Shown here: positions 23,801 through 50,200 of the stretch, in pieces
Layout: every line of letters begins with the position of its first letter
Position numbering within the stretch: position 1 is the first letter of the stretch
Assembly: GCF_003918875.1 (NCBI RefSeq)
Contig: NW_025767268.1
Coordinates: forward strand, 868,001 to 932,000
Origin: Haliotis rubra
Lineage: Eukaryota
DNA: 64,000 nucleotides
Direction: 5' to 3'
The notes under the pieces: model-generated
Told to the model about the DNA's origin: nothing
The model's database searches: none
Seen by the model: the letters and a program-made list of their open reading frames with translations, nothing else
Program-made: the position numbers and the translations under genes

Positions 23801-25080
23801 ATGGTGTCCAGCATAGCGTCAGATATACAGTGTGTGTCCAGCATAGTGTCGGTATACATGGTGTCCAGCATAGTGTCGGTATACATGGTGTCCAGCATAG
23901 TGTCGGTATACATGGTGTCCAGCATAGTGTCCAGTATACATGGTGTCCAGCATAGTGTCGGTATACATGGTGTCCAGCATAGTGTCGGTATACATGGTGT
24001 CCAGCATAGTGTCAGTATACATGGTGTCCAGCATAGTGTCAGCATAGTGTCAGTATACATGGTGTCCAGCATATAGTGTCAGTATACATGGTGTCCAGCA
24101 TAGTGTCAGTATACATGGTGTCCAGTATAGTGTCGGTATACATGGTGTCCAGCATAGTCGGTATACAGTATACATGGTGTCCAGCATAGTGTCCAGTATA
24201 CATGGTGTCCACGGTATACATGGTGTCCAGTATAGTGTCATAGGTGTCCAACTTATACATGTATACATGGTGTCCAGTATAGTGTCATAGTGTCCAGCAT
24301 ACATCCAGCATAGTGTCCAGCATACGTGGTATGGTGTCCAGTATAGTGTCAGTATACATGGTGTCCAGCATAGTGTCGGTATACATGGTGTCCAGTATAG
24401 TGTCGGTATACATGGTGTCCAGTATAGTGTCAGTATACATGGTGTCCAGCATAGTGTCAGTATACATGGTGTCCAGTATAGTGTCGGTATACATGGTGTC
24501 CAGTATAGTGTCGGTATACATGGTGTCCAGCATAGTGTCAGTATACATGGTGTCCAGCATAGTGTCCAGGTATACATACATGGTGTCCAGTATAGTGTCG
24601 GTATACATGGTGTCCAGTATAGTGTCAGTGTCAGTATACATGGTGTCCAGCATAGTGTCGGTATACATGGTGTCCAGTCCAGCATAGGTGTCAGTATAGT
24701 GTCATGGTGTCCAGTATAGTGTCGGTATACATGGTGTCCAGCATAGTGTCGGTATACATGGTGTCGGTATACATGGTGTCCAGCATAGTGTCGTGTCTAG
24801 TATACATGGTGTCCAGCATAGTGTCGGTATACATGGTGTCCAGCATAGTGTCGGTATACATGGTGTCCAGCATAGTGTCGGTATACATGGTGTCCAGCAT
24901 AGTGTCGGTATACATGGTGTCCAGCATAGTGTCGGTATACATGGTGTCGAGTCATAGGTGTCCAGCATAGTGTCGGTATACATGGTGTCCAGCATAGTGT
25001 CGGTATACATGGTGTCCAGTGTAGTGTCGGTATACATGGTGTCGGTATACATAGTGTCCAGCATACCGTCGGTGTACATG
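20850..25080. repeat. 27-bp minisatellite, about 4.2 kb
   Basis: Unit GTATACATGGTGTCCAGCATAGTGTC(A/G). Confidence 0.98.
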
Positions 25081-25295
25081 GTGAAGAGCCGGGTTGGAAT
25101 TGGTCTTTTGTAACCCATGCTTGTCCAAATAGGTGACTAACGGGATCGTGTGGTCAGACTCGCTGACTTGGTTTACACATGTCATCGTACACATAGATCG
25201 ATATTCATGCTGTTGATCACTGAGTTGTCTGATTATTGACAGACCGCCGTCATATAGCTGGAATATTGCTGAGTGCGGCGTTTATCAAGAAACAA
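25080..25295 (+). mobile_element. SINE-like family B at the end of the 27-bp array
   Basis: Homology to 14007-14256. Confidence 0.8.
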
Positions 25296-27233: not shown

Positions 27234-30200
27234 ATGACCTCCTGGCTATTGGTCCTCGCTGTCCTCGCCCTGGGTGCACGCGCAGCTGTACCAGAGGACG
27301 AGATCACAGAGTTGCCCGGATTGAGTCGACTCCCCAGCTGGAAGCAGTACTCTGGCTTTCTGAAGGCCTCGGGAACCAGGAAGCTGCACTACTGGTGAGA
27401 ACACCCGGTGGAAATATATATTGATGTGAAAACACCTGGTGGTAATAAACGTTACTGTAAGAACACCTGGTGGTAACAAATGTTGCTGTGAGAACACCTG
27501 ATGGTAACACATGTTGCTGTGAGAACACCTGGTGGTAATAAACGTTGCTGTGAGAACACCTGTGGTAATAAACGTTGCTGTGAGAACACCTGGTGGTAAC
27601 AAATGTTGCTGTGAGAACACCTGGTGGTAACAAATGTTGCTGTGAGAACACACCTGGTGGTAATAACTGTTGCTGTGAGCACACCCGGTGGTAAAAAATG
27701 TTGCTGATAACACCCGGTGGTAACAAATAATGGTGGTTTGAGAACACCTGGTGGTAATAAATGGTGCTGTGGAGAACACCCGGTGGTAATAAATGTGTTG
27801 TGAGGCACACCTGGTGGTAGTAAATGTTGCTGTGAGAACACCTGGTGGTAATAAATGGTGTGTGAGCACACCTGGTGGTAATAAATATTGCTGTGAGAAC
27901 ACCTGAGGGTGGTAAATATGGTGCTGTGAGAACACCTGGTGGTAACACATGGTGCTGTGGAGAACACCTGGTGGTAATAATGTTGCTGTGAGAACACCTG
28001 GTGGTAATAATGGTGTTGTGAGAACACCTGGTGGTAATAATGTTGCTGTGAGAACACCTGGTGGTAATGATGGTGCTGTGAGAACACCTGGTGGTAATGA
28101 TGGTGCTGTGAGCACACCTGGTGGTAATAATGGTGCTGTGAGCACACCTGGTGGTAATAATGGTGCTGTGAGCACACCTGGTGGTAATGATGGTGTTGTG
28201 AGAGCACCTGGTGGTAATAATGGTGCTGTAATACCTGGTGTTGCTGTGAGAACACCTGGTGGTAATAATGTTGCTGTGAGCACACCTGGTGGTAGTAAAT
28301 ATTGCTGTGAGAGCACCTGGTGGTAATAATGTTGCTGTTGTGAGCACACCGGTGGTAATAATGGTTGCTGTGAGCACACCTGGTGGTAATAATGGTGCTG
28401 TGAGCACACCTGGTGGTAATAATGGTGCTGTGAGAACACCTGGTGGTAATAATGGTGCTGTGAGAACACCTGGTGGTAATAATGTTGCTGTGAGAACACC
28501 TGGTGGTAATAATGGTGCTGTGAGAACACCTGGTGGTAATAATGTTGCTGTGAGAACACCTGGTGGTAATAATGTTGCTGTGAGCACACCTGGTGGTAAT
28601 AATGGTGTTGTGAGAACACCTGGTGGTAATAATGGTGTTGTGAGAACACCTGGTGGTAATAATGGTGCTGTGAGAACACCTGGTGGTAATAATGTTGCTG
28701 TGAGAACACCCGGTGGTAATAATGTTGCTGGTGAGTAAATATTGCTATGCACCTGGTGGTAATAATGTTGTGAGCACACACGTGAGTAAAATATTGCTGT
28801 GACACCTGGTGGTAATAATGGTGCTGCTGTGAGAACACCCTGGTGGTAATAATGGTGCTGTGAGAACACCTGGTGGTAATAATGTTGTTGTGAGCACCTG
28901 GTGGTAGTAAATGTTGCTATGAGAGCACCTGGTGGTAATAATGTTGTTGTGAGAATACCTGGTGGTAAATAATGGTGTTCGGAACATCCTGGTGGTAATA
29001 ATGTTGCTGTGAGAATACCTGGTGGTAACAAAAACACACAACAAATGTTGTTGGCAACACCGAAAAGCCCTGTTGAAAATACCAAGTAGCAAGTAGGGCT
29101 CTCACAGGTCAAAATTTGGGACTCGAGTACTCGAAGGTACTGTCAGACCGACTGGACCCGAGTACCCGACAATTTGATGCTTATCTGAAACCAACGTTCA
29201 AGGTATACACGTAGCTGTTGTTGGAATACCAAATGTATATGAGTCTCAAAACGCGTTCTGAATAAAGCAATTGATGTTCAATGTCAATAGAAGTATCTAT
29301 TACCTTTCTATTATTGCAAACAGAATGTGAAGGCAACGTAAGTGTCACTGTGACCCAGTTCTACGCGATCAATTATGTGATTAATATTCATGAGCTGGGC
29401 CGGTGATACTTTACTACGCCTGTAAATGTTGTAATATGATTGGATGTGTCCGGGAAAAGAAACCAATCAATGTACTACTCTTTTCTTTTGGTTTTAAGTT
29501 TGACTGCGCTTTCAAGATTATCTAATATTAATATGTCGTTGCAGTTATGACATATCAGCAACTTTTAAACATTCACCTAGACGATAAGTCACATAATCAA
29601 TTAACCTTAATCACGGTTAAAATGCGGCAAAACACGTTCCAAAGCTGGAAGATACATAGAAGATACAAAGCATTCATTGATTGGTGCTGCATTAGATACT
29701 AGTATCTTGTAAAGATGGATCGACTATGGAACTTAAAGAATATGTAAAACAGGATTGATGTTTATTTGAGATTTCTTATAGTGAAAGAGTTTTGGTTTCA
29801 AACTAAAGACTAACCATTTATTGAGTAACACTACATTGTATTTCTTTTTCCGAAACTCTGCTGAACGGAGATCACGTGAATGGTATTCATTGTGATTAAA
29901 CTTTCACCTAGTAAGCATATAGGTCTCCAAGTGTGAATGTTATTTTGAATGCGTATGTATGTGTTGATTGTTGCTGAATATGCACCTGCTGGAAATACAC
30001 TGGATAAGAACGACTGAATATCTATGTAGAAAACAAGTTGTTCAAACATAGGTATAGTGGGCAGTGACAGTGACACAGCGGTGAGTAATACGCTTGTCCA
30101 CGCGTCCGTAGTTAGGGCAACGGCAGGTACTGTTTTGGTACTGATATTTTGTTCTCCCTTGCAAACTTCATACGTAATTATGAGGTAGTTGTGAATTGTC

Positions 30201-33200
30201 GCAGGTACATGGGACCTGGGTAATTTGGGTTCAATGGTTCACAGAAAGCCCTGAAACCTCCCTTTAAGAAGACTTAATGGTCGCATATCCTTAACGCGCA
30301 TAAGCATTGCTTTTTGCGTAATACCTTCATGCCATTTCCGCACTGTCAACAGGCTTGCGACTTTTGCTGTCAAACTTACCAAACTGCCCCAGCGTTGCTT
30401 GTTGAGCTGGTTTACAGTGCTTATTGTGGGTGCTTACAGGACAAATGCTTGCGCAACTAAGGGAAACGCCACAAAGACGGCATTTCGTATTTTGGCCACT
30501 AAATCAAGATAAAAATGCGTCCAGACATTGGATTTTTTCTCACGATCATCCATCTTGATTGCATGAGATGTTTAGAGGTATCTCCCCTGCGAGTCCTCGA
30601 GTCCAATCAATTGGACTCGAGTCCTGCTTTACCCGACTCGGCCCCGAGTACCCGAGTACTCGTGAGAGCCCTAGAAGCAAGGAAAAAACTGTTGTTTGGA
30701 ACGCCTCCTAGTATTCAGTGATTTCAGAGTGTATCTGCCTAATGTGACCCAAAATATAACAAATTGTAACGTGGTACGGCTACATCACTTTTGATAACTA
30801 CCTTCCTCGTTTTCCAACCATTAGAAATGAAACCCTTAATCAATTAATGTCCTCTAGGTTTGTTGAGTCTCAGAGTTCCACACCGAAGACGGACCCTGTT
30901 GTTCTGTGGCTGAATGGAGGACCCGGATGTAGCTCCCTACTGGGACTCCTCACAGAGAATGGGCCGTTCAGGGTGAGTCTCTAGTGTGAGTTGGTAGATA
31001 CCGGGACATTGCTCTTATAATTTCAGTAATGCTTAGAGGGCGCCGCCATAAACTTTACGGGCGTTGAACAGCAAAAGCAAGAAAGTAAGGGACCGTTCAT
31101 AATTTATGGCTGGGTTAGGGGTGGGGTGATTGGGGGTGATGATGATGATGATGATGATTTTAAGGGGGGTCACCCATTTTGTTCTAGGGAGGTAGGTGGG
31201 GTCATCAATTTTGTACATAAAAATATTTAAAATTTATGCTTTAAAAATATGGAAAGGGGGAGGGTGTGTGTCATTGACTTGTACATGACATGCAGGGGTC
31301 ACTTACTTAAATTCGTGCATACATTTTAGAGGGGGGGTAATTCACATTGTACATGCTTCTCCATAAAATCATCATCACCACAAAGTGATCAAATGACGTA
31401 ATTTCTAAGTCAAATGCATCAAACAAACTTATACAAAGGAGTCTTCGTAATTTTTCTGGTTTCACACTCATTGCAACTATCACTTCATGTCAAACAATTT
31501 ATGCTGAATGTGTTCGATCCTCTCTTTGTTACCTGACAGATAGCCTCAGACGGGGTGACGGTGCAGTACAACCCTCATAGCTGGAGTAAGGTGAGTACAC
31601 TGTATGGGGCAGGCATGAGTGATGAGTGCGTGCGTGCGTGTGTGTGTGTGTGTGTGTTGGGCATGAGTGTGAGTGCGTGCGTGCCTTTCTGCGTCAGCTT
31701 ATTGTGAGAAAGGACCGGAAGTGAGGCAGTTCCCAAATCTGTACAACTTGTGAAACCCCTGGTTTAATCAATCAATCAATCAACTTTATTTACAGCATGA
31801 CTAGCATTGTCAAATTCAACGTACATGTATTTCTGTTTTGTGCATGGCCTGTATATACTGAGTCAAAAGAAAACTTCACAAAATGTAATTTGAAAAATAA
31901 TGAATAATTTTTCTCTGATGATACATCTATGTATCCGAAATGGGATCTATCTTTCGACTCTAGAAAAACGTTAGCAAAACCCACTCAAACCCATCCATTC
32001 GTCGTGCAAATGACGTTGAGTGCCAAATCAGGTTTTGCACGTGCAGTCGATCACGTGATCTTCGCATCGAAGTTTTCTTCATATGCACGTGTTTGCATTG
32101 GCCTCAAGAATTGAAAAACACTTTTAAACCACAGTTCTAACGGTACTTGAAATGCCACGATTGTCAAATGTGCAACGTGAACGTGCCGTTGGCATGTTGC
32201 AAGCAGGAAGATCAGTTATTGACGTCGCAAGAGCAATGGGATGCAGCCGTCGTACTGTGTATGACTTGCGAGGTCGTCTACAACAAACTGGCACCACTTC
32301 TGATCGCCCAAGGTCGGGTCGTCCACGTGTGACGTCACGAGCAGAAGACCGTCAAATCGTCCTACGTCACCTACGTGACAGATTTCTGCCGGCTACACGA
32401 ACCAGGGCTGAGATGTTTAGAGGTCGACTGTCCTCACAGACCATTCGAAATCGGTTGCGGGCTGCCAATCTCCATTCTCGACGTCCATATCGTGGGCCAA
32501 TATTGACGCCGTTTCATCAACGTCAACGTCTGCTGTGGGCCCAACGTCACCTCCGATGGACCCAGAGACTGGAATCGAGTCGTCTTTAGCGATGAATCCA
32601 GGTTTACCCTCAGATTCGCGGACGGCAGGCATAGAGTCTGGAGACGACGTCGTGAACGGTATGCCCAATGTTGTGTACAGGAAGTCGACAGATTCGGGGG
32701 CGGAAGTTGCATGGTGTGGGGTGCTTTCTGTGGGAACAACCGTTCCCGACTTCTGGTCATCCGTGGAAACCTCACAGCTGCTGCTTACCGCGACCAGGTG
32801 CTCACCCCTGAACTCGTTCCTTTCATGGCGGCTCATGGCCCAGGTCTACAGTTCCAGCATGATAATGCTCGGCCGCATACCGCGATGTTGACACGAAATT
32901 TCCTTCAAAACGCTGGAATCAACGTCATGGACTGGCCATCGAGGTCCCCTGACCTTAATCAATAGAGCACGTTTGGGATGCACTTGGGAGAAGGCTTCGT
33001 GGTCTTAGGAACCAACCTCAGAATTTGCAGGAACTTGGCGCTGCCTTGCAAAAGCAATGGCGCAGAATCCCCAACCACGTGTTCACAAGCATCAGGCAGT
33101 CGATGAGGAGACGGTGTTTGGCAGTGGTGAATGCGCGGGGCGGCCATACACGATATTGAACTGAGAAATTTCGCATTTTATTCTTGTGACTTGACATTCT

Positions 33201-36200
33201 GTATACCCATGTTTTGGAACGGCGGTGTAGCCTAATGGAACTGATTATGGCACTGTCGGTGTATCGAGTACATCACACACAGATCTCAGCAATGAAATAA
33301 TAACAATTTAACCATCTTACCATCTCTTGTTCTTTTATAGTGCCCTGAAGAAAGAATGTGAAGTTTCTTTTTGACTCAGTACATGTTGTTTCTCGAGGCC
33401 CCTGCAGGTGTTGGGTTCTCCTACAGTGACGACAGAAACTACACCACGAATGACGATGAGGTGACCGTCTTGGAAACACTACATCCATACTGCACGTCTG
33501 AAATATACTGCATCTCTCGTTGATCATTTGCATACACATTTATCATAAAGAAAAGCTCAGCTGAATTTTCCTATTTAGAGGTTGACATGCGCTACCACTT
33601 AGGTACCACTGCTATTTTTACCCTTGAAATATATCGGCTGTTTTTAAATTTCTTGTTGCCTGTTATGTCAGATATATTGACTGTAGATTTGTCATACTGC
33701 TTCAACTGTGTCGGTAACATTTAATATATACTTTTTTAGGTAGCCCAAAACAACTTCCTAGCGTTAAAGGATTTCTTCATGAAGTACCCCGAATACAAGA
33801 CCAACGATTTCTACATCACCGGGGAGAGCTACGGAGGCATCTACGTACCGACACTCAGCGCACTCGTCGTCGACGACCGCGACATCAACTTTAAGGTAAG
33901 TCTGTAGTTCGAGGATTCGTAAAGATTAACAAGTTAAACAGTCACATCGTTAAGATAATATAAAACAATCACATTAGTACGAATTACAATAACGGCATTG
34001 CTGAAATATATAGTCCACATATATAGTGGTGTAGTTGATAGAGTGTCTGCCGGACAGCGGGAGATCAGAGTTTGGATTCCCTCGTACCAAAAAACTTTAG
34101 AAGATATAACCTGTTGTTTTCCTGCCTAGCACTCTCCATGTAATGAAGTAAGCCATATGCTTGAATGTAGCTAAGTAATTTAAACCACGACTTCCGGTTT
34201 CCGGGTAGGATTGACCCCCGCAAACTATGTTGGTAATAAGAGGGGACGAAATTGCTCGGGCATGGTGACTTGCTTGATTGTATACCCAAAGGGAATTGAC
34301 CGTTGCGCACAATAACCATCACTGGATGTTCTGGTCAAGATTCGATTATCTAAGAACTGGCAACAGGAAGAAGGAACATGGAGTTTGGCGTTAAACAACA
34401 AACAAATACAGCTACAGCTCCTGTAACCGGAACAGTCATTATTGCTAGTAACTATGGTAACGCTTACATTGCTTCTCACTAGTGGTGTCCCGATTAATTG
34501 AAATAATCGAAGATTGGTCGCAGTGATCAAACGACCAAGCAATCGATCACAATTTCTCATAATCGAACATAAACGATTTTGGAACTACTGTTTAAGTCTT
34601 TGAAAAACTTGACAATGGAACATATCTTAGAAGTTGTCAGGGCCTGAAAACGTGTTTAATTCTTAGAAAACTCACTTCACTAATTGAAAAGCCATGACTG
34701 AATGTTTCTCTGAGACTCAAGGAAGTTTATGTTCATGATATATTAGTCATCACTTTATAGTAGCAAGTTGCAATCATGTTATACATATCTGCAATAACAA
34801 CCTGGATAGGAAAATCTGAAAAATTACGCTAACCAATTTTTTTCGATGATTGTTCGTTGGTTAAGAAGCAATCATCAATTGTGAGATTTCAACCAATTCC
34901 CAACACTACTTCTCACTCACTATTATGATAGCAACAACCGCTGTTCCTTGCCATATCTGTCAGAATGCCGCAGCTACAACAATGTCGTTAATGCTGCTTC
35001 CGATAATCCTTTCAGGGGTTTGCAGTTGGCAATGGCGTCACTGACGGCAGCATGCTTGACAACTCTATCATCTACTTCGCCTACTACCATGGCATCACCG
35101 GTGATATGTACGTATTCAGCATTTGTATTAAACCTGGAAGACGCGTGTCAACTGCCAGACACCAGGGTCCCGTTCCACAAAAACGATCGCAGCGCAACGT
35201 ATGTCGGAAGTCTATGTTAAAGTATACGAGTTACAAGGGCTAACGGTAGCTTTGTGAAACGGGGACTAGACTTAGTGACCTCTCCCTTATGGCATCTCGT
35301 TTGTTATGTTACATGTCTAGTGACATACCAGTCAACATGACGTTCCACAGCAAATGTTCATCTTCCAGCTTGTTTGGTAATGTGAAAATGTTTTGTAACA
35401 CTGATTTAACGCGATATGCGCATGACATAGTGATGACAGCAGGTGTTCGCAAAAAATGGATAAGCTTATCCTGACCTACCAACGGCGCCCATCATAAACA
35501 CATGCAAAGAAAAGTCGCGTTCACCTTGAAAACATCGCACCTTTCTCAGGTGAAAACAGGGAATTGCATTGGACATCATTTTGTGTTTTGTCGCCTGAAT
35601 CTAAATAGGTCCGAATAGGAACCAGATGCGGCGATCTCACTTGCCTCCTTTCTATCTAGCTGAGGTGAATAAATCAGTGGACTGGAATCGGATATTTGAC
35701 TGTAAGCGAAGGATATCAGATAATATAAACCTAAAGCTTAAGTTATATCTGTCAAAGTTCACCCTTTTTTCTCCTTGCCGTTCTGATCAGAAAGTCAGCG
35801 TCTTATTCGTAAAGATGTAAGTCAGCAAATAGGGTATCTGAGGGATGTGTACCTCTTTCCCGAATGTTTTACCCCAGTATGTTCAATGATATTAACAATT
35901 AGGAAGACCAGCATGCCGCATTCTGTCTCTTCAGATGGCATTTGCTTTCAGTTTTGATCAATGGTTCTCAACCTCTGAATATTAGATATGTAACTATTAG
36001 TTAGAAATGACATTCAGAGCAAGAAATGAAGGTGTCCTTTACGTTTGCCAATGTTGAAAATCCACATGCTTTGACATTATAGAATTATTGAGACTGCAAA
36101 ACAAATCCTGGCATTTCTTAAGCATCTATATGGTATTGCTCTTTCTCTAATACTATTTGTGAATATAGAGAAAGTCCTATGTTGATTGTATTTAAGGATT

Positions 36201-39200
36201 ATGGTATATCATTGAGACATCATTTACTGGACCGGTCAGTGTGTTCCTGTTTGTAGGATTTTTTTTTTCTTTCATGTTTTTATTCCCAGAATTATGTTTA
36301 CAGACTTTACCTCAGTAGTACAGTACAGGTAGCTTCTTAGTATGCAAGTACAGTGTTTCTTTGATCTCATTGTCAAATAACATGCTGTTCACAAATATGT
36401 AAGTTTCATTGTACACAAGTACAGTGTTTCCTTTGTCACTCACTCTAACATCATGCTGTTCACAAATATGCAAAAAGGTCAAACTAAGCATGTACGTGAA
36501 GTATTACATGTTTACAGACTTTATCTCAGTAGTACAGTACAGTACAGTACAGGTAGCCTCATAGTACATAAATATGTAAAATGGTCAAACTAAGCATGTA
36601 TATGAAGTGTTATATGTTTACAGATTTTACCTCAGTAGTACAGTACAGTACATGTAGCCTCCTAGTTTGTAGGAATTTTAATGAAGGCGGAATCTTGTAC
36701 AAACGAGGAACTGACAAAACTTTATGTTTTAAAATCAAGTCAAAAGTGGATTGTACTGATGAATCTTTTCAACAGATTCGCCCTCAGTTAACCGTCGCCG
36801 ATAATTTAGCCTTGTTAAATTATTATTCTTTGACGAAACAATATGTGAAGTGTTGTTTCCTCATAATGTCATTATTATTTGAGGCCATATATAAAGCATA
36901 TACATTTCCTGTGACGGTGTAATTGCAGTTTTTTAGTTCTTGGGAGATTTAGATCTCGGTACACCCTCATTAACACAGGTCGTTTCTTGTTCTCTAGCAC
37001 GTGGAACAACCTGATGACCTACTGCTGTCAGGGCCAGGAAGGTCGGTGCGACTTCAACGCCAAAAGCTCCAATGACACCAACTGCAAGAAAGCGGTAAAT
37101 GTCATATGTTACTTTTAAACACTACCGGGAAGATCCGGGTAAGAATTGGTCTACAGCAACCCACGCATGTCGTAAGAGGCAACAAACGGACTCGCTGAAT
37201 TGGTTGACACATGTCACCGTATCCCAACTGCGTAGATCGATGCTCATGAGGATGATCACTGGATTGTCTGGCCCAGCCTCGAATTTTTACAGACCGCATA
37301 GTATTTATGTTTGCTGAGTGTGGCGCATTTTATGCTCTCAGATGCAAATTAATATAGTTTCTGTTGTACATAGTTTTGACAAATAGTATATCACAACACT
37401 TATTGCTTTCAGCAGGATTGTCAAAAACTTCATCACACATCATAGCTTGTGACATTAAAAACAATTGATGATCGGTGTAAAGGGGAGGTAATTCTGTACG
37501 TTGAAGACACAGACACATATTGCTTATCTCCTCAGCTGTTCGAGTCGTACGAAGCACTGTACAGCAGCGGTCTGAACGTCTACAACCTGTACGGAGAGTG
37601 CGTGAACACGGCGACAGGACTGACATACGACGCCAGCACAGATACCTACATCTCCTCCAACTTCGGCTGGTTCCTGCCAAACTCACCCCGAGTCCAAGAA
37701 GAAATCAGAGTAGGTCTGAGAAAATAGATATTGAGTTTCAAAAACACAATCAAGACGTTGGTTAAAACGGAGTTCATTCAAACACAAGCGGCGTCTTTGA
37801 ATGAATCTAATAACCAAAGGAAAAACAGAATATGTGAAACAAGTACAATACGATCTAGGACGGTAATCGCCTTAAAGATGAATTGCTAGTTACAGTTGCC
37901 AGGAGTTGCGTTCCATGACTTGGTGTGAGGTTGCTAAGCCTGTTCGCCCGCTACACTTAATTATGCAAACACACAGTACTACTCCTGAATTACTCTTCAC
38001 AACATGAAAATATTGTTCTCTGATTTGTACAAAATTAAAGGATGCACCAGAGAGGATAAAATTCTCAGATGAGTCGAAATGGCAGCCGTGGCAACCGGGA
38101 ATATATCTAACAGTAAAGTGAACAAGACACAGCTCTACCAATCTGTTATTAGTCTACCTCGAGAGACCTGCTGATAAACTTGTTATTTGGTAGGAAATAA
38201 GAGAATATCCAATGGGATTTGAGGATTTTGTGTCACGCGTGGGTGAGTGAGTGTGTTAAGTTTAACGCCTCTTTGAACAGCCTTCCAGTTATATTTTGAC
38301 GTGTCAGCTGCATGCTGGAGTGAGTGAGTGAGTTTGGCTTTACGCCGCTTTTTGCAATATTCCATCAATATCACGGCGTGGAACTCTTGAAATGGGCTTC
38401 ACTTATTGTACCCATGTGGGAATTGAACCCGGGTCTTTGGCGTGACGAGCGACGCTTGAACTACTAGGCTACCCAACCGCCCGCTTCATGCTGGTGGAAA
38501 GCCCGAAAAGATGCGTGTCCTAGACGTTTACCACTTTGATGAAGCCCACGATTACATTGTTTTGTCGTGACAAAACTAGAAACATAATCGGAGTGAGCAG
38601 GGATTCGAACCAGCAATAACAGATTTCTGAGAGCCCGAAGCTCCTCACAGCGAATTTCGACAACTCTGACCATCCATCCCTGAAGGAACGCTGTAGATAG
38701 CTGCATGTGATGGCTAAACGGATTAAACTCGATTTATTGTACAAATATGGGGATACTTTGAAATTATGACGTCATGAACACTAGGTATTGTTAAACTGAT
38801 GCCATATCAACTTACCAATCAGCATCGAGAATATCAATATCGTGCCTCTATCGGAAAATTATCAAACAGATCTTTCTACGTTTGTCTCTAATACTTCTCA
38901 TTACAATGTTTTATGGTCTGAAGGTTATCAAGACTCTCCCAGCTGAGAAGCTCCGGGTAACACCGCCCTGTCTCAATGAAACAAACATCCTTGTATACCT
39001 GAATCAGCCGGAGGTGCGCCGAGCTCTCCATATACCAGACTCTGTCCAACGTTGGGATTCCTGCAGGTAGGTTTTGGAACATCTTATGACCACGGCTGTG
39101 TCGGGTGATATTGTGCAACCATGGCGGGGATTCTAGGGTGCTTCCGGTTAAATAGATTTCACATTCTGATTGTGACAATATTCGCTTGGTAGTTCATGAA

Positions 39201-41743
39201 GTTCTGACCCCCCATCAAAATCCGGCTAAGAATTGGTCTTAATGAGTCCATGCTTTCCATAGAGGCTGATAACGGGATAGGGTGATCGGATTGAACACTT
39301 GGTTGATAATGTCATCGTATCCGCTTCAATTTCTGTATGACTGGAGTAAGTGAGTGTTTTACGCCGCTTTAGAACTATTCCAGCAATATATGGGACTTCA
39401 TACATTGGCTTCACACATTGTACCCATGTTGGGGAATCGAACCCGGGTCTTCGGCGTAACCACTAGGCTACCCCACCGTCCCTGTATAGCTGGCACATTG
39501 GTCAGTGCGGCGTTAAAAAACAAACAAACAAATCACATTTATACCCTTTCTGATTGCAATTAACTTTCACTCCTGTTTACATACGCCGATCATGCTAGTT
39601 CAATCTATCGATATTGCAACAGAAAGATTGTGTTACACTTACTGATGTTGACTGATTTCACAGAAAAGCAACCTGTAATTTCTGAAAGCACTGAAGGGTT
39701 ATGAGTTAGTGATGATCTCATCCTTGTTTCAGTGGACCAGTGTCACAGGGATACGTCAGCACCTACAATACGATGAAGGAGAAGTACCTCAAGGTCCTTG
39801 ACGCAAAGGTTAGCATACATCATACCACATTCTAAGGTTTAGGGGCAGACTCTCCAACGGATTGTGTTGCTGTTTCCAGCAGATTCTTAAGTCGACAGTA
39901 TTATTGTTAAGAGACAGTATCTATTACTAGTATCTCTCCTGGTGAGAAATTACTTAGTTCCTTTAACTATCGTATTAAAAAATCGTTTCTAATGAGATGA
40001 AACTTGAAAGGCTTGGATCGACTAGATTCACCAGTTCTTAATTGGTGACAGATGTTCCATTTCCTATTAACTATTTAATCATAAAATGAATGAACTGTAT
40101 CGATTTCTTGGTATGTGATAATACGAGGTTGATGTTGCAGAAACGGGTGTTGGTGTACAACGGCGATGTGGACATGGCTTGTAACTTCCTGGGAGACGAA
40201 TGGTTTGTCGACTCCCTGAAACAGAAGGTAGACTTTTTGTCATAGAATATTTGTATGAATCACTGAGGCAATAAGAGAAATGTGGAGACCAGACTAATGA
40301 TATTTGTCCGTATAGAATTCTGAATTGTTACATATTTTCCTTCCTTCTAGTTGTATGCGTGCGCGTGTGTGTGTGCGCGCGTTTGTGCTATATTCTAACC
40401 GGGAGGTGCGGTTGGGTAGCCTAGGGGTTAAAGCTTTTGCTCGTCACGCCGAAGACCCGGGTTCGATTCCCCACATGGGTACAATGTGTGAAGCCCCTTT
40501 CTGGTGGCCCCCGCCGTGATATTGCTGGAATATTGCTAAAAGCGGCGTAAAACTTCACCCACTCACTCAATCTAGGCAGGTATCGATTCGGTGGCTCAGT
40601 CAGTTGACCATGCATGTCATCGATGCCTACATCTCCTGTTCACAGAGCGTCCTGGCCCGCAAGCCTTGGTACTACACTGCCGCCGACAAGACGAAACAAG
40701 TCGGGGGATTCGCCAGAGGGTTCGAGAATCTCGTGTACGTCACAGTCAGGGTACGTGACGTCATCTTGTCATCAATACAAGGTCTTCAACAATCTTTAGT
40801 TTTCATTGATCCACCTATGTCGGCATCTGTAGGTATCATAGATCCACGTCTTAAGGAATTATGGATCCACGTCTCTAGGTGTCATAGGTCCACATCGTTA
40901 GTTATCATAGATCCAGGTCCCTAAGAATCATAGACCCATGCCTGAAGTTATCCCAGATTCACTTCCCTTTGTATCCAAGGTCGGCATCAGCGGTTATCTT
41001 AGATCCACGTATCAAGGAATAATGGATCCACATATCCGTGTATCACAGGTCCACATCTATAGGTATTAAAGATTCACGTCTGTGGGTACTTATAACACTA
41101 CATCCCTAGTTATTATCGATCAACGTTACTCGGTATCATAGATCCAGGTCCTTAAGTATCATGGATCCAGGTCCTTAAGTATCATGGATCCAGGTCCTTA
41201 AGTATCATGGATCCAGGTCCTTAAGTATCATGGATCCAGGTCCTTAAGTATCATGGATCCAGGTCCTTAGGTGTCATGGATCCCGGTCATTAGGTGTCAT
41301 GGGTCCAGATATTTAGGTGTCAGAGATCCAGGTCGCTAGGAACCATAAAATGTCGTCTCTCGTTATCATAGATCTGCGCCCCGTGGTGTCTTATATCCAC
41401 GACTACATATCAGCGATCTCGGCGTGGTTTGGTAGACTGTCAGTCTTACCTGAAGTTATGACGATGCATACAATAAAAACGATCCCTAAAAGTATCATAG
41501 GTGCAATAAACCAGCCCCACGTGTTCTCTGGGTCAGTATCATAAATTACATTAATCTTTCCTCGCCGACATGGATAAACAAGAATTTCGAGTAGAAGCAC
41601 CGACCGATAAAACTGCAACAGGACATATTTTTATTCAATCTTTGACTTTCTATTTCCAGGGTTCCGGCCATATGGTTCCGTCAGATAAACCTGAGCCAGC
41701 GCTTGTAATGTTCACCAACTTCATTAAAAACACTCCTTTCTAG
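27234..41743 (+). CDS. CTSA: Cathepsin A-like serine carboxypeptidase, copy 2 (13 coding exons; exon 4 acceptor supplied by Tc1 TIR; about 473 aa)
   Basis: Exons 27234-27394, 30858-30972, 31540-31590, 33380-33460, 33740-33895, 35016-35107, 36998-37094, 37536-37709, 38924-39066, 39733-39808, 40141-40227, 40646-40750, 41660-41743. [15 protein letters not shown] and GSGHMVP intact. AATAAA at 41747. Expression depends on use of the exon-4 acceptor. Confidence 0.88.
27395..29030. repeat. 30-bp minisatellite starting at the CTSA-2 exon 1 donor
   Basis: Unit GTGAGAACACCTGGTGGTAATAATG(G/T)TGCT. Confidence 0.97.
29094..30673. mobile_element. Non-autonomous hAT-type DNA transposon
   Basis: TIR TAGGGCTCTCAC...GTGAGAGCCCTA, 8-bp TSD GTAGCAAG/GAAGCAAG, subterminal CTCGAGTAC/CCCGAG repeats, no transposase ORF. 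Confidence 0.8.
31858..33379 (+). mobile_element. Tc1/mariner DD34E DNA transposon
   Basis: About 23-bp TIRs CTGAGTCAAAAGAAAACTTCACA / TGTGAAGTTTCTTTTTGACTCAG, flanked by TA on both sides; contains a transposase. Confidence 0.95.
32152..33159 (+). pseudogene. Tc1 transposase with two frameshifts
   Basis: HTH N-terminus, GRPR motif, [25 protein letters not shown](P)IEHVW (34 aa D-to-E spacing after repair), ending RGGHTRY*. Frameshifts near 32567 and 32960. Confidence 0.92.
34480..34908. mobile_element. Non-autonomous hAT-type MITE
   Basis: TAGTG...CACTA ends, perfect 8-bp TSD CTTCTCAC; the equivalent site is empty in copy 3 (about 48630-48710). Confidence 0.8.
37123..37328 (+). mobile_element. 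SINE-like family B
   Basis: Homology to 14007-14256. Confidence 0.75.
38318..38484 (-). mobile_element. SINE family A
   Basis: Homologous to 2375-2542. Confidence 0.85.
39346..39481 (-). mobile_element. SINE family A nested in an older family B copy (about 39205-39530)
   Basis: Family B head lies to the left and family B tail to the right of the A copy. Confidence 0.7.
40402..40568 (+). mobile_element. SINE family A
   Basis: GGGTAGCCTAGGGGTTAAAG...GGGTTCGATTCCCC...GCTGGAATATTGCTAAAAGCGGCGTAAAAC...ACTCACTC. Confidence 0.9.
41140..41335. repeat. 23-bp minisatellite (degenerate copies back to about 40800)
   Basis: GGATCCAGGTCCTTAAGTATCAT. Confidence 0.9.
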
Positions 41744-42014: not shown

Positions 42015-43210
42015 GTTGACAAACACATGGTATTGACAAACAAACAAACACGTGGTATTGACAAACCAACAAACGCGTGGTATTGACAAACCAACAAACA
42101 CGTGGTATTGACAAACCCACAAACACGTGGTATTGACAAACCAACAAACACGTGGTATTAACAAACCCATAAACACGTATTGACAAACCAACAAACACGT
42201 GGTATTGACAAACCAACAAACACGTGGTATTGACAAACCAACAAACACGTCAACAAACACGTGGTATTGACAAACCCAAAACAACCAAGTGGTACTTGAC
42301 AAATCAACAAACACGTGGTATTAAAAACCAATAAAAACACGTAGTATTGACAAACCAACAAACACGTGGCATTGACAAACCAACAAACACGTGGTATTGA
42401 CAAATCAACAAACACGTGGTATTGACAAACCAACAACCAAGTGGTACTTGACAAATCAACAAACACGTGGTATTAAAAACCAATAAACCCATAAACACGT
42501 GGTATTGACAAAAACACGTGGTATTAACAACAAATTGACAAACCAACAAATACGTGGTATTGACAAACCAACAAACACATGGCATTGACAAACCAACAAA
42601 CACGTGGTACTGACACACCAACAAACACGTGGTACTGACAAACCAACAAACACGAGGCATTGACAAACCAGCAAACACGTGGTACTGAAAAATTAACAAA
42701 AACGTGGTATTGACAAACCCACAAACACGTGGTATTGACAAACCAACAAACACGTGGTATTGACAAACCAACAAACACGTGGTATTGACAAACCAACAAA
42801 CACGTGGTATTGACAAACCAACAAACACGTGGCATTGACAAACCAACAAACACGTGGTATTGACAAACCAACAAACACGTGGTATCAACAAACCAATAAA
42901 CACGTAGTATTGACAAACCAACAAACATGGTATTGACAAACCAACAAACACGTGGTACTGACAAATCAACAAACACGTGGTATTAACAAACCAATAAACA
43001 CGTGGTATTGACAAACCAACAAACACGTGGTACTGACAAACCAACAAACACGTGGTATTGACAAACCCACAAACACATGGTATTGACAAACCAACAAACA
43101 TGGTATTGACAAACCAACAAACACGTGGTACTGACAAACCAACAAACACGTGGTACTGACAAACCAACAAACACGTGGTACTGTCAAACCAACAAACACG
43201 TGGTATTGAC
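42015..43210. repeat. 25-bp minisatellite containing CACGTG
   Basis: Unit ACAAACCAACAAACACGTGGTATTG. Confidence 0.97.
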
Positions 43211-44246
43211 TAACCTATAAACAGTCAAGGGGGAGCCGCTATTTGAACCACGATGTCAGGATCCTGACATGTTTCATGATGTAAATTGCGTCACCTAAGA
43301 CAAAAGTGCCACCTTTTCCCCACAACAGAGTTGAAACTTTATGAAGGCTTCATCTGTTGAGAATACACAATGCTAGTTAGGAAGTGTGACATAATTACAC
43401 TTTCTCAGAAAAGTTCGGATTCAAACTGAGTCCGATCAGGGAGTCGAACATACGATCTAAGAGTGAAAAGCTTCATCGCCAGCACACAAAGTTAGCGATC
43501 TAACCCTCCCAGCCAACAAATTTTCACAAAAATGGAAGTCTAGAACATCTATTTTGTGTGCCACTCTGTAATAGAATCAGCGCGTTATCTATTGTCTTGA
43601 CAAGCTGATATTTACGGAGACTAGATACTCAGGCTGCCATGCAACCCACAGCTTAGAGAAACAGTTCAGCTACATCCCCGTGGGTAGCCCTATCTCTCAC
43701 GGCTTCAACCCAGGTATTGGGTGAATATGTATAACCCATATCACATAAATGGGATTAACTTGATATACAGGGCCTGTGCAATGACAGCACGTCGCAAACC
43801 AGATTACACAATTCACGCTTACGAGATACCACGGCAAAGACGAAGACACAAGTCTGTAGAGAGATACACAAGTCTGACAGGTAAGGCCTGAACATGTCGA
43901 TAGGATGTACCTGACTGAATTTTTAAGCTGCCTATGTAAAGCTGGTATTGGTGAGTACAGTAAGACTGTAACACAAGAAATTTACTTCACACTTTGTACT
44001 CATTGATTTAGGTTATCGAAGCTGGGTCTTCGGCGTGTCGAGTGAACGCTTTTAAGGACTTGGTTGTCCTAAATAACTACAAATAAAGACATTTTACACG
44101 TGATTTCCCCAGTGATTATAATTTAAGAACAAAATTTCACCTGTTCCATTCATAACATGTTTGAACTATATGTATGTCTTTCCAATTTGTCCCTCCGTGA
44201 AATATGAAGATGGAATATTTAAAGGTAAATTCGTCAACAATCAAAC

Positions 44247-47200
44247 ATGATGATGACCTCCTGGCTACAAATCCTCGCTGTCCTCGCCCTGGGTGCACGT
44301 GCAGCTGTACCAGAGGACGAGATCACAGAGTTGCCCGGATTGAGTCGACTCCCCAGCTGGAAGCAGTACTCTGGCTTTCTGAAGGCCTCGGGAACCAGGA
44401 AGCTGCACTACTGGTGAGAATACCTGGTGGTAACAATTGTTGCTGTGTGAATACCTGTGGTAACAAGTATTGCTGTGATAAACACCTGGTGGTAACATGT
44501 ATTGCTGTGAGAACACCTGGTGATAAAACTATTGCTGTGAGAACACCTGGTGGTAAAAATATTGCTGTGAGAACACCTGGTGGTAACCAACATTGCTGTG
44601 TGAACACCTGGTGGTAACATTGCTGTAAGAACACATCGTGTTAACAAATATTGCCGTGAGAACACATGGTGGTAACAATATTGCCGTGAGACTGACTGAC
44701 TGAGTTTGGTTTTACGCCGCTTTTAGCAATATTCCAGCAATATCACGGCGGGGAACATCAGAAATGGGCTTCACTCATTGTACCCAATTTCCGTGAGAAC
44801 ACCTGGTGGTAAGAATATTGCTGTGAGAACACCTGGTGGTAACAAACGTTGCTGGTGGGAACACCTGGTAGCAACAAATATTGCTAGTTCGAAGATATTC
44901 TGGCAACAAATATTGCTTGTGGAAACACCTATAATAATAGACATCACTCTCGAGAATAGGCCTTCGTAACAAACATCACTGGCCAGGACACCTTGTGGTA
45001 ACAAATGCTGCTTTTGAGAACGTGATGATCAAAATCTCCGGTGAGTTCACATTGCATGTGTCAGAACACCACGTGGCAATTAAAATAATACATCGTGGTA
45101 ACAAACATTAACTCTCAGCACACATCCTTGTGTGAAACAGTGCTGATGAAATCACCTCGTGGTCACCTACATTACTGGTGAACGAATGTTACCGTGAAGG
45201 AGAATTCGTGGGAACAAGTACTGCTGCAGGGACGCTCTCTTGGTTACATATATCTCTGGCTATATAATGGCGAATAATGTTGTGAGAATAGTCTGAGGTA
45301 ACGATTACTGCTATGTGAATACTCCGCTGTGACCCATACTGCTGAAAGTAGACCCAGAGTTGACGAGTAATGATGTGTGAGGTGAGGTGAAATTGGGTTT
45401 TACGTCGTGCTTGAGAATATTTCGCTCATATGACGACGTACATGCGTGTGTATGTGTATGTGCGGCTGCTTGTACTAGCCCAGACTTAAGCTGGTTTTAT
45501 AGTGCTAGCCCACTGAGATACCATGCTGCAGTGAAGCATGAATACCCCACTCAGACACATTATACTGACTCCGAGCCGACCAGTCCTTATTGTACCCATT
45601 AATGCCGAGCACCAGACAGCGACCAACAAGTACCACATTTTAACGTCTTTTGGTATGACGCGGTCGGGGATCGAACCCGCGACCTTCCACTCTCCGGGCG
45701 GACGCTCTAACCACTACACCACGGAGGCGGTCAGTAATGATGTGTGTGAGAATACCACTACAATGACACATCTAAGACTATTGTGGTATAGATAAGGACA
45801 AATATTATGGATGAACAACTTCTTTATTCGGGTGATGCGACGTTTCGATTCTGATTCTTGTATCGTTGTCAATCAAGTATACTTATGGATGAAAAATGAA
45901 GTTGTTCATCCAAAAAGTTTGTCCTTATCTGATTCACCCATTTCTAAATACGCCACTCAGAGAAATATTGTGGTATATTCACATGTTAACGTAGGAACCG
46001 CGTTAAGTAAACAAATGCTGCTTCGCTGAGTGTACAAAGGACAGAATGACTATAGATGAGACTTGTGACAATATATAGTGTTCAATTATTGATGACAGAT
46101 AACCTGTAACTACACCCCGTAGCCTCACCTGTATACTTCTTCCGAGAATAACACGCAACAAATACTTATAGAGGGTAACCGTGCTATAATACCATGCTAA
46201 CTTAACCTGCATACGTTCAGACAATATAGTCCTTCCTCGCCCACCAAGTAGTAAAAGTAATGACCTTCATCAATTAATGTCCTCTAGGTTTGTTGAGTCT
46301 CAGAGCTCCACTCCGAAGACGGACCCAGTTGTTCTGTGGCTGAATGGAGGACCCGGATGTAGCTCCCTGCTAGGACTCCTCACTGAGAATGGGCCGTTTA
46401 AGGTGAGACACATGTGTGTGTTGAAGAAATACGGATCGGGTTGCAATAATTGGTGACTTAGTTAATTGCCGGTATCTCAACCCCAGTGACTAGCTCTTGA
46501 CGTTGTTCATATTAACCATCACTGGAGTGCCTAGTCTCGACTGGAGATTCTTTACGGTACGCCGTCACAGAGCTGGCGTAAAAAAAACGTATAACCGATA
46601 ACCCGATCGACTTTAATAGCTTGTAAACGAGTTCTTAAGATGAGATGTGTTTTTGAGGTAGAATGCATTAAACAGACGTACTATCACTTCTATGTTTTAC
46701 ACTAAAAAACACCACTATTTTGGTGAACTAATTAAGCAACATTCACAGAGTGTTTCCTTCTAACATGTCAAACTACAATGTGCTCTTTCTCAATGCACCC
46801 ATAAAGTAGATCCACAGATGAATATAAATCTTACTGCATTGCTTATTTGCTTTTCTTTGCTACCTCACAGATAGCCACTGACGGGAAGACGGTGGAGTAC
46901 AATCCATATAGCTGGAACGCGGTAAGCTGGAAGGGATGGGAGAATGTGTGTGTGCGAGGATCCTGGAACGACAAGGGACACAACTCTATTCATTGTTTCC
47001 AACAATCTCCCACCGACAGGGAAGGCTAACGGAACCAGCATTGAAGTGTATAACAAATGTGTCGAAAGTTATAGTCATATGTGTTTGTATGGATTTAGAC
47101 CTTCGTGTTAGCACCAACATAATCAAGTACCATAGGCATGTGCAGCGGACATTTTGACCTCCTAACAGCCATTGATCTTTGTCCATGCAGGCATATTTAC

Positions 47201-50200
47201 ATATTCACAAACGTTTAACATGATACATTAAGGTGTTTCTCTGTCACCAGATCGCCAACATGCTGTTTCTCGAGGCCCCTGCAGGTGTTGGGTTCTCCTA
47301 CAGTGACGACAGAAACTACGCCACAAATGACGATGAGGTGACGGTCTCGGAATTACCGTGACAACCAATAACAGTATCACGTCCTTATGTTTAACATACA
47401 AACTGCAAGTCGTGTTTATTAGTAACATAAGGCCAGCACTGCGTGTATTCTATTAACATATGATCATCATTACGTGTTCACCACTAACATACAGATTACA
47501 TCAGGTGTCTATCACTCTGGGCTGCACCATGGTTTTACCACTGGCATATGAATTTCACCATGTGTCATCAACTCGACCGTACCGCTGGGATGTCTCACGT
47601 GTCAGGACATAATGCTGTGTGCTGTTCCTTGACACTGGCCGTATGTCATACTGCTTAGCAACAAACCCCTGTACATCCGGGTTAGAACTGGTCTTCAGTA
47701 ACCCATGCTTGTCGTAAGAGGCGACTAACGGGATTGGGTGGTCAGGCTCGCTGAGTTGCTTGACAATATGTAATCGTATCCCAATTGCGTAGATCGATGC
47801 TCAGGCTGATGATCACTGGATTGTCTGGTTCAGACTCGATTATTTACAGACCGCCGCAATATAGCTGGAATATTGCTGAATGTGGCGTAAAACAACAACA
47901 ACGCCAAGATTAGCAACAATGGCAAATAATGTCATCTTGCTTATAGTAACCATGAGAAATTGACATGGGCGATACCCATGCCGACCCAATACCGACTTCA
48001 AGGCCAAGATGGCAGTTAGCAGAGGATTCCTGCCAGCTTCTACTTAACCTTTTTCCAATAGACTAAACATATACACGCGCTGGACGGTGAACCTTTCGGA
48101 TAGAGACAGAGCAATGTTTTATCTGGTACATCGACGGTAGACTATTTCACACTGCTTTGGCTGTGCCGGCATTAGTCGTTGTACTTTTATGTGTTGAAGG
48201 TAGCCCTCAATAACTACCTAGCGTTGAAGGATTTCTTCATGAAATACCCTGAGTACATAGCCAACGACTTCTATATCACCGGGGAGAGCTACGGAGGCAT
48301 CTACGTGCCGACACTCAGCGCACTCGTCGTCGACGACCGTGATATCAACTTTAAGGTAAGTTAGTACTGCGAGGATGCATGAAGATAAAACCCCAACCCA
48401 TGAAGAGTCTTACAGTCACATTGGTAACACACGACTTAAAGTCACAGTGAAAAGCCATATGGCCCACGCCACTGACAGTGCTTCACACTTCTGTGGTTTG
48501 GAGGATATAGCGTCTGCCTAGAAGACGGGAGGTCGGAGATCAATTTCCTGCTACCAAAAAACATTTCCTCCTTCCACAAGATGGTATTTGTTGTTTTCCT
48601 GGAGCTTTGCATCAAGGACAACTTAAGTGGAAACGCTTACATTGCTTCACAATCACACACTCACTCACTGTTGTGACAATAGTAACGGTTGATCCCTGCC
48701 ATACCTGTCAGAATGATGCAGCTGCTTCCGATCATCTTTTCAGGGGTTTGCAGTTGGGAATGGCGTCACTGACGCCATCATGAGCGACAGCTCTCTGGTC
48801 TACTTCTCCTACTACCACGGCCTCATCGGGGACATGTACGTAGTCACCCCTGTCGATCTGTATGTGTTGTAAACTTGGAAGGTTCGGTAGACCAAAGTTA
48901 GTAGCCTCTCCCATGTGGATGTTTTCTTGTTCTGTTGGTATTATGGTTAGATACCAGCCAAGCACAACAAACGTTCTTCTTCAACTTGTTTCAGAATGTT
49001 GAAATGTTTTGTAACAATGATTTAACGTGACATGTGCAGGACATAGTGATGATAAAGTGGTGATAAAAGGTGTTGGCAAACCTACCAATAACCTTATCCT
49101 GACCTACCAATAACACTGACTTATCCTGACCTGACCAATAACACCTTATCCTGACCTACCAATAACACCTTATCCTGACCTACCAATAACACCTTATCCT
49201 GACCTACCAATAACACCTTATCCTGACCTACCAATAACACCTTATCCTGACCTACCAATAACACCTTATCCTGACCTACCAATAACACCTTATCCTGACC
49301 TACCAATAACACCTTATCCTGACCTACCAATAACACCTTATCCTGACCTACCAATAACACCTTATCCTGACCTACCAATAACACCTTATCCTGACCTACC
49401 AATAACACCTTATCCTGACCTACCAATAACACCTTATCCTGGCCTACCAATAACACCTTATCCTGACCTACCAATAACACCCGTTATCACAAACACACCA
49501 ATGCAAACACGCGTCACAAACACATGCCAAGGCAAGTCACCTGGACAAATTCGCATTTCAAGTTAAACTTGCATTGGACATCATTTTGTCACTGATGCGT
49601 CAAATCTGGAAATGTCTTGCACGTGTCTACCATAACCGTTTGAAAGCTGGCGCTTAGAAAGAGTAGGCCTATAGTACCTCACAAGTTGTAAAATGTAGAA
49701 ACCAAATGCTGGAGCTGTGTGTCATACAGCCATGGGGAGAGTGTTTTTAGGGAGTTGCATTGGAAATAGTTGGACATGTAAAGTGTGTGAGCAGCTGCCA
49801 GATACCCTCTACACAAAATGTTTGGGACGTGAACATCATAACCAAAGGTAACTGTATATGACAGCTTGCAATGTTTGACAAAGGCGAAACGTAACAATTA
49901 TTTGATGCAAAGTGTACACGACCACAGATCATAGATCGTTTGCCAACACCGGTTCAGTGCCTTGACTAGGTAGATGTGAATCTCCACTATCACTGATCGT
50001 TTCCTTGTCTGCAGCACGTGGAGCCTCCTGATGACTCATTGCTGCAAGGGTCAGGAGAGTCGCTGCAACTTCTTTGACCAAATCTCCAATGACACCAACT
50101 GCAAGAGAGCGGTACCTTTTACAAATTCCATTTTTCACCCAAAGCTTCAACAGGACGTATAATCTTTTTGTTATGGAGTTTATTAATGAAAACCTAGAAT

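What the first reader, a model, noticed from the sequence alone, without database searches (positions are those of the whole stretch)
33341..33460. Tc1 terminal inverted repeat replaces a lost splice acceptor and keeps CTSA copy 2 in frame
Seen: copy 3 exon 4 starts ...CACCAG|ATC GCC AAC ATG CTG TTT CTC GAG. In copy 2 the native acceptor and first 7-8 exon bases are gone, and they are not found at the left Tc1 flank either, which points to a transposon-adjacent deletion. The right TIR ends AAGTTTCTTTTTGACTCAG|TAC ATG TTG TTT CTC GAG: a pyrimidine tract plus AG in phase 0, matching exon 3's phase-0 donor. The product has IAN replaced by Y (net -2 aa). All other copy 2 exons are intact, while the transposase has two frameshifts. 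I saw no AATAAA on the sense strand of the element. A competing AG at 33339-33340 would add TGC CCT GAA GAA AGA ATG TGA, a premature stop. Inference: the gene survives only by splicing into the transposon end, and acceptor choice could act as an on/off (NMD) switch. The element could not excise without removing the acceptor.
Basis: partly seen in the sequence, partly recalled or inferred. Interest (0 to 1): 0.85.

Follow-up and report, generated by a model that had tools for sequence, protein, structure and literature searches.

The report
Tc1 transposon replaces abalone splice acceptor
In the blacklip abalone reference genome, a Tc1 transposon and a neighbouring deletion removed the splice acceptor and first 7 bases of exon 4 in one of three tandem cathepsin-A-like genes; the transposon end offers the only in-frame substitute acceptor, but its use is unshown and the product would lack two near-invariant residues, so a recently damaged or leaky copy is likelier than a proven rescue.

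Summary
The window is Haliotis rubra GCA_003918875.1 (100% identical over 24.5 kb). It holds three tandem cathepsin-A-like (S10) genes. In copy 2 a 1,522-bp Tc1 element (31858-33379) lies directly against exon 4. Homology to copy 3 and to three abalone orthologues starts exactly at 33381. The conserved native acceptor and 7 exon bases are gone, and they are not at the left flank.

The terminal AG of the right inverted repeat (TIR) is the only canonical, in-frame, stop-free acceptor upstream of the exon. It would give IAN->Y.

The claim that the gene survives this way is untested. The single reads call was lost to a filter. RefSeq's model (XP_046544198.1) does not use the TIR AG; it needs a non-canonical CA..GT intron. 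The lost Ala-Asn is near-invariant in 241 homologues. A competing AG 39 nt upstream has a better pyrimidine tract and leads to a stop.

The intact ORF says little. The H. rubra branch shows purifying selection overall, and the Tc1 frameshifts may predate insertion.

Most likely this is a young null or leaky allele of a redundant paralogue on one haplotype. Splicing from a host donor into a Tc1 end is already documented in C. elegans.

The parts
27234..41743 (+). CTSA-like copy 2 (13 exons), equal to NCBI XP_046544198.1 except at the exon 3/4 junction
31540..31590 (+). Exon 3 of copy 2; phase-0 GT donor at 31591-92
31680..31855 (+). Left flank of the Tc1 element (intron 3 DNA). It has no detectable homologue in orthologous or paralogous introns and holds no AG acceptor for exon 4.
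31856..31857 (.). Left TA (target-site duplication)
31858..33379 (+). Tc1/mariner element (DD34E), in the same orientation as the gene
31858..31880 (+). Left terminal inverted repeat (TIR)
32152..33156 (+). Transposase reading frame in three pieces (32152-32586, 32561-32962, 32959-33156), separated by two 1-nt frameshifts
33339..33340 (+). Competing AG acceptor inside the Tc1 element. Its pyrimidine tract is the stronger of the two (0.88). Its use reads into TGA at 33359-61.
33357..33379 (+). Right TIR. It reads outward as a pyrimidine tract followed by CAG; the terminal AG is at 33378-79.
33380..33460 (+). Truncated exon 4 as spliced from the TIR AG (81 nt against the native 87 nt). Native sequence begins at 33381.
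31598..33380 (+). The non-canonical CA..GT 'intron' that the RefSeq protein (HSWSK-VSN-MLFLE) requires
33740..33895 (+). Exon 5 with the catalytic-serine motif GESYGG; intact
47216..47337 (+). Copy 3: intact native acceptor (AG at 47249-50) and the 87-nt exon 4, used as the comparison

Best explanation
This is a real structural lesion in the reference haplotype of Haliotis rubra. A defective Tc1 element sits in intron 3 of the middle of three tandem cathepsin-A-like genes. A deletion starting at its right end removed the rest of the intron, the conserved acceptor and the first 7 bases of exon 4.

The result is most likely a young null or hypomorphic allele of a redundant paralogue. Some transcripts may be spliced from the exon 3 donor to the TIR-terminal AG, as Tc1 ends are used in C. 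elegans. This would be incidental. The product would be damaged: Ile and Ala lost, and a near-invariant Asn changed to Tyr. Other transcripts would use the upstream AG and be stopped early.

Shown: the anatomy, the loss of the acceptor, the ancestral IAN state, and the frame relations. Inferred: the order of insertion and deletion, the young age, and the low or absent function.
For: - Anatomy and breakpoint.
- Ancestral state: all orthologues and both paralogues keep the acceptor and IAN or VAN.
- The native exon has no TA at the junction, so a flanking deletion is needed.
- Ala is 226/241 and Asn 236/241 in homologues, with a fixed W-x-x-[IVL]-A-N spacing. Human CTSA also has IAN.
- The competing AG has a better pyrimidine tract (0.88 against 0.62) and leads to a stop.
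- RefSeq does not use the canonical 31590|33380 junction.
- Copy 3 is 82% identical in protein and intact, so copy 2 is redundant.
- The assembly is one purged haplotype of a highly heterozygous animal (PMC6774278).
- The H. rubra branch has N/S 12.5/22.5 against 7.5/38.5 in H. asinina, a mild excess.
Against: - All 13 exons are open, and the catalytic Ser and His motifs are intact.
- H. rubra-specific substitutions avoid conserved positions.
- Pairwise omega against H. asinina is 0.11. There is no sign of long decay, which also fits continued function.
- The TIR AG lies within the range of real acceptors in these genes.
- If the two transposase frameshifts arose in place, an intact 1.4-kb CDS over the same time would be unlikely by chance. 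My rough estimate is about 0.03.
- No RNA or population data were obtained.
Confidence: 0.55

Rival explanations
1. Copy 2 is kept functional because the spliceosome joins the exon 3 donor to the AG at the end of the right TIR. This gives an in-frame protein with IAN replaced by Y. The choice between this AG and the one 39 nt upstream tunes output through NMD.
For: - It is the only canonical in-frame, stop-free acceptor.
- Its pyrimidine tract and its C at -3 are within the normal range.
- There is no poly(A) signal in the element on the sense strand.
- The ORF is intact, with low omega and no damaging substitutions elsewhere.
- Precedent: in C. elegans Tc1::dpy-19(n1347), a host donor is spliced to sites in or near the 3' ITR. 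About half of those splices are GU-AG (PMC12779559).
Against: - No junction evidence exists.
- Being in frame is a 1-in-3 chance.
- The product lacks near-invariant Ala-Asn and shortens a fixed spacing.
- The stronger upstream AG gives a stop.
- The RefSeq model avoids the junction.
- ORF intactness says nothing if the lesion is young or the Tc1 element was already defective when it inserted.
Confidence: 0.25
2. Transcripts of this allele are repaired by non-spliceosomal (SOS-type) or hybrid splicing triggered by TIR pairing. The odd RefSeq junction (31597|33381, CA..GT) reflects real RNA.
For: - The RefSeq protein can be encoded only with that junction.
- SOS and hybrid splices are often non-GU-AG and lie in or near Tc1 ITRs (PMC12779559).
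- The 3' site is 1 nt outside the right TIR.
Against: - The 5' site is 260 nt upstream of the left TIR, and only 7 nt past the normal donor.
- The 7 added bases exactly make up for the 7 lost exon bases. A homology-driven gene model would produce this.
- In C. elegans, intronic Tc1 insertions were not SOS-spliced.
Confidence: 0.05
3. Assembly artefact: the Tc1 element and its left flank were joined wrongly to exon 4 in the hybrid nanopore/Illumina meta-assembly.
For: - The assembly was merged, RNA-scaffolded and haplotig-purged.
- No reads could be laid across the junction.
Against: - The junctions fall cleanly at a complete TIR with flanking TA on both sides.
- The sequence is collinear with orthologues on both sides.
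- A false join would not be expected to fall exactly at an element end next to an exon.
Confidence: 0.05

Closest known systems
Removal of Tc1 from C. elegans pre-mRNAs by splicing (Rushforth & Anderson 1996, cited in PMC12779559), including the spliceosomal and hybrid splices at Tc1::dpy-19(n1347)
   Same: A Tc1 element lies next to a host acceptor. The host 5' donor is joined to sites in or near the 3' inverted repeat, and some of these splices are GU-AG. The authors speculate that Tc1 ends carry splice sites.
   Different: - Here the native acceptor is deleted, so the TIR AG would be the only route.
- The host is a mollusc.
- No RNA evidence exists.
- The replacement alters conserved residues.
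SOS splicing of DNA transposons (AKAP17A/CAAP1/RTCB; PMC12779559)
   Same: A DNA transposon with paired TIRs lies inside a transcribed gene. RefSeq implies a non-GU-AG junction.
   Different: SOS splicing cuts near both ITRs and was not seen for intronic Tc1 insertions. Removing the element here would still leave no acceptor.
Exonisation and splice-site donation by transposable elements (for example Alu-derived acceptors; maize Ds/Mu alleles spliced at element ends). From general knowledge.
   Same: A pyrimidine-rich element end followed by AG acts as a 3' splice site.
   Different: Those cases are documented by transcripts. This one rests on sequence alone.
Flanking deletions next to Tc1/mariner or P elements, used for gene knock-outs in C. 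elegans and Drosophila. From general knowledge.
   Same: The deletion starts at one end of an intact element and runs into neighbouring gene sequence.
   Different: Here it is a natural allele in a wild-derived reference genome.

Membership tests
Tc1/mariner (DD34E Tc1-like) DNA transposon | Terminal inverted repeats flanked by TA | tested here: met
   23-nt TIRs with 2 mismatches; TA on both sides
Tc1/mariner (DD34E Tc1-like) DNA transposon | Transposase with paired HTH DNA-binding domains and a DDE catalytic domain | tested here: met
   HTH_Tnp_Tc3_2 at 2.4e-10 and DDE_3 at 7.7e-09. A 34-residue spacing between the second D and the E, counted across the second frameshift on the translation.
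Tc1/mariner (DD34E Tc1-like) DNA transposon | Intact, autonomous transposase | tested here: not met
   Two 1-nt frameshifts
Peptidase S10 / cathepsin A (lysosomal protective protein) | Peptidase_S10 domain with the catalytic Ser (GESYGG) and His (GSGHMVP) motifs | tested here: met
   PF00450 on XP_046544198.1. Exon 5 matches human CTSA at 1e-15. The motifs are present.
Peptidase S10 / cathepsin A (lysosomal protective protein) | Conserved W-x-x-[IVL]-A-N segment before the strand xLxLE/DxPxGxGFS | tested here: not met
   The TIR-spliced product reads W-S-K-Y. Ala is 226/241 and Asn 236/241 in homologues.
Transposon-end-derived 3' splice site in use | Canonical AG with a pyrimidine tract at the element end, in frame with the upstream donor | tested here: met
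Transposon-end-derived 3' splice site in use | Transcripts that carry the host-donor-to-TIR junction | not testable with these tools
   No RNA run was listed. No transcript-derived proteins were found in the protein collection.
SOS splicing substrate | Excision junctions in or near both ITRs of an exonic or UTR element | tested here: not met
   The only non-canonical junction implied (by RefSeq) starts 260 nt upstream of the left TIR, and the element lies in an intron.

The most novel reading that the evidence does not exclude
The Tc1 allele is the normal, selected state of copy 2 in H. rubra. The outward-reading pyrimidine-CAG end of this Tc1 family serves as the constitutive acceptor of an enzyme-coding exon. 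That would make it a natural, fixed example in a mollusc of the idea that Tc1 ends carry spliceosomal sites which spare host genes.
Probability: 0.2. Interest if true: 0.6.

Novelty: new member of a known kind. Interest (0 to 1): 0.3.

Why it matters
If transcripts do use the TIR AG, and the allele is common, this would be a natural case outside nematodes of a Tc1 end standing in for a destroyed host acceptor. It would bear on the recent suggestion that DNA transposons evolve splice signals in their ends.

As it stands it is mainly a well-defined lesion in one of three redundant genes. It is also an annotation warning: the RefSeq protein for this gene rests on a CA..GT intron, and its residues V-S come from translated intron sequence.

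Tried and rejected
- **Exhaustive protein search.** Exon 8 as query gave only short genomic ORF fragments.
- **Word-index search.** The exon 4 ORF as query found only other species' fragments, including a TARA scaffold.
- **Exact-product look-ups.** The Tc1 145-aa ORF and the exon 5 ORF found nothing. I therefore could not recover other Tc1 family copies or other individuals' alleles.
- **Homology of the left flank to the native acceptor.** By eye ATGGCC resembles ATCGCC. The idea was rejected because the scores were no better than shuffles or unrelated acceptors.
- **'The whole intron 3 was replaced.'** I considered this after the H. asinina comparison and withdrew it. The first roughly 17 nt align with H. 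cracherodii, and by eye that similarity continues a little further into the intron. The intron is also poorly conserved overall.
- **PWM acceptor score.** A PWM built from 56 related acceptors was over-fitted and I give it little weight.
- **Modelling the Y variant.** This was not done, because the spliced protein has no reference and may not be typed in.

Full report
**Identity of the window.**
- A 24.5-kb stretch fetched for NCBI protein XP_046544198.1 is 100% identical, without gaps, to window 22234-46743. The source is Haliotis rubra, GCA_003918875.1, contig QXJH01000057.1.
- That assembly is a haplotig-purged haploid representation of a highly heterozygous animal (PMC6774278).
- The window carries three tandem cathepsin-A-like (Peptidase_S10) genes on the + strand.
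- Copy 2 spans 27234-41743 and has 13 exons. Copy 3 corresponds to XP_046544196/7.

**Checking the observation.**
- *The element.* A Tc1 element occupies 31858-33379. It has 23-nt inverted repeats (2 mismatches) and TA on both sides. Its transposase is on the gene's strand and hits HTH_Tnp_Tc3_2 and DDE_3. The ORF is broken by two 1-nt frameshifts and has no nonsense codons. No AATAAA or ATTAAA lies on the + strand.
- *The junction.* Exon 3 ends at 31590 in phase 0. Similarity of copy 2 to copy 3 starts exactly at 33381. Similarity to the copy 2 orthologues of H. asinina, H. cracherodii and H. rufescens does too.
- *The native acceptor.* Those four genes and copy 1 all keep an 87-nt exon 4 preceded by a strongly conserved acceptor. 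In copy 2 the Tc1 end takes its place, and the exon is 7 nt shorter.
- *The left flank.* It resembles the native acceptor no more than it resembles unrelated acceptors, and it holds no usable AG.
- *The AGs.* The TIR-terminal AG (33378-79) is the only in-frame, stop-free AG upstream of the exon. The AG at 33339-40 reads into TGA.

**How the lesion arose (inferred).**
- The native exon start has no TA, which Tc1 integration requires.
- The simplest history is insertion into a TA of intron 3, followed by a deletion. The deletion ran from just inside the right-hand target duplication, through the acceptor, into exon base 7.
- The minimum loss is the roughly 35-40 nt conserved acceptor-proximal intron plus 7 exon bases. 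The upstream extent is unknown, because intron 3 is poorly conserved between species.

**Does the gene live on through the TIR acceptor?** Direct evidence could not be obtained. I worked beside those places afterwards.

Indirect evidence points both ways. For the rescue:
- The TIR AG has a C at -3 and a pyrimidine fraction of 0.62. That is inside the range of the 23 real acceptors of copies 2 and 3 (0.44-0.88).
- The whole CDS is open and the catalytic motifs are present.
- Omega against H. asinina is 0.11.
- The 13 H. rubra-specific replacements outside the junction sit mostly at variable positions.

Against the rescue:
- The product would read W-S-K-Y-M-L-F-L-E. In 241 homologues the spacing W-x-x-[IVL]-A-N is fixed, with Ala 226/241 and Asn 236/241. 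Human CTSA also has IAN.
- The AG 39 nt upstream has a better tract (0.88) and yields a stop.
- Being in frame is a one-in-three event.

**Why the intact ORF is weak evidence.**
- Lineage-specific counts are S 22.5 / N 12.5 for H. rubra and S 38.5 / N 7.5 for H. asinina. Fisher p is 0.04-0.12, depending on rounding.
- This fits purifying selection over most of the branch with, at most, a short relaxed period. Too few mutations are expected in such a period to break the ORF.
- The contrast with the broken transposase counts only if its frameshifts arose after insertion. Defective Tc1 copies are commonly mobilised in trans (general knowledge). I could not recover other family copies to check.

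**The RefSeq model.**
- XP_046544198.1 equals my model everywhere except the junction, where it reads HSWSK-VSN-MLFLE.
- An exhaustive search shows a single way to encode this: exon 3 extended by 7 nt to 31597 and exon 4 starting at 33381. That makes a CA..GT intron. No canonical micro-exon solution exists.
- The 7 added bases equal the 7 lost ones. A model driven by homologous proteins, or by transcripts of an intact allele, would give this result.
- The model is therefore no support for the TIR junction. It hints that the pipeline had no RNA support for the canonical 31590|33380 intron.

**Comparison with what is known.**
- Splicing that removes Tc1 from C. elegans pre-mRNAs is long known (Rushforth & Anderson 1996, cited in PMC12779559).
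- In Tc1::dpy-19(n1347), Tc1 lies 11 nt from an acceptor. Host donors are joined there to sites in or near the 3' ITR, and about half of the splices are GU-AG. The authors speculate that Tc1 ends carry splice sites.
- The proposal here is another possible instance of that kind, not a new mechanism.
- SOS splicing itself does not fit. The element is intronic, and its removal would leave no acceptor.

**Verdict.**
- The lesion is real and precisely defined.
- The rescue is plausible but unproven, at about 0.25.
- A young null or leaky allele of a redundant paralogue is more likely, at about 0.55.
- An earlier follow-up in this scan on another H. rubra locus (s1-349447) found an ordinary intronic Tc1 element. 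This locus differs, because the acceptor really is gone.

Noticed in passing
window 31598-33380: The RefSeq protein XP_046544198.1 needs a non-canonical CA..GT intron. Its residues V-S are translated from the first bases of intron 3. This is a probable annotation artefact.
   Followed up: yes
window 38315-38483 (+) and 40408-40575 (inverted); also 2376-2543, 13472-13637, 39336-39460: A SINE-like repeat of about 165 nt. Two copies in inverted orientation flank exons 9-11 of copy 2, a layout that can favour back-splicing.
   Followed up: no
window 20850-25083; 27395-29031; 40800-41450; 42019-43223; 44414-44900: Several long minisatellite arrays lie within and between the CTSA copies, with steps of about 27, 30, 69 and 25 nt. 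The array in intron 1 of copy 2 is related to one upstream of copy 3.
   Followed up: no
window 33357-33379 compared with 47233-47250: The Tc1 right end resembles the native acceptor it replaced (about 11 of 17 positions, both a pyrimidine tract plus CAG). On the other strand the left TIR reads outward the same way.
   Followed up: partly
copy 2 CDS compared with L084, L082, L085: The H. rubra copy 2 branch has relatively more replacements (N/S 12.5/22.5) than the H. asinina orthologue (7.5/38.5). None falls at strongly conserved positions except a conservative Y-to-F change.
   Followed up: partly
window 31853-31857 and 33380-33384: The flanks of the element are nearly palindromic (ATATA ... 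TACAT). They resemble the AT-rich palindromic target preference known for Tc1-like elements.
   Followed up: no
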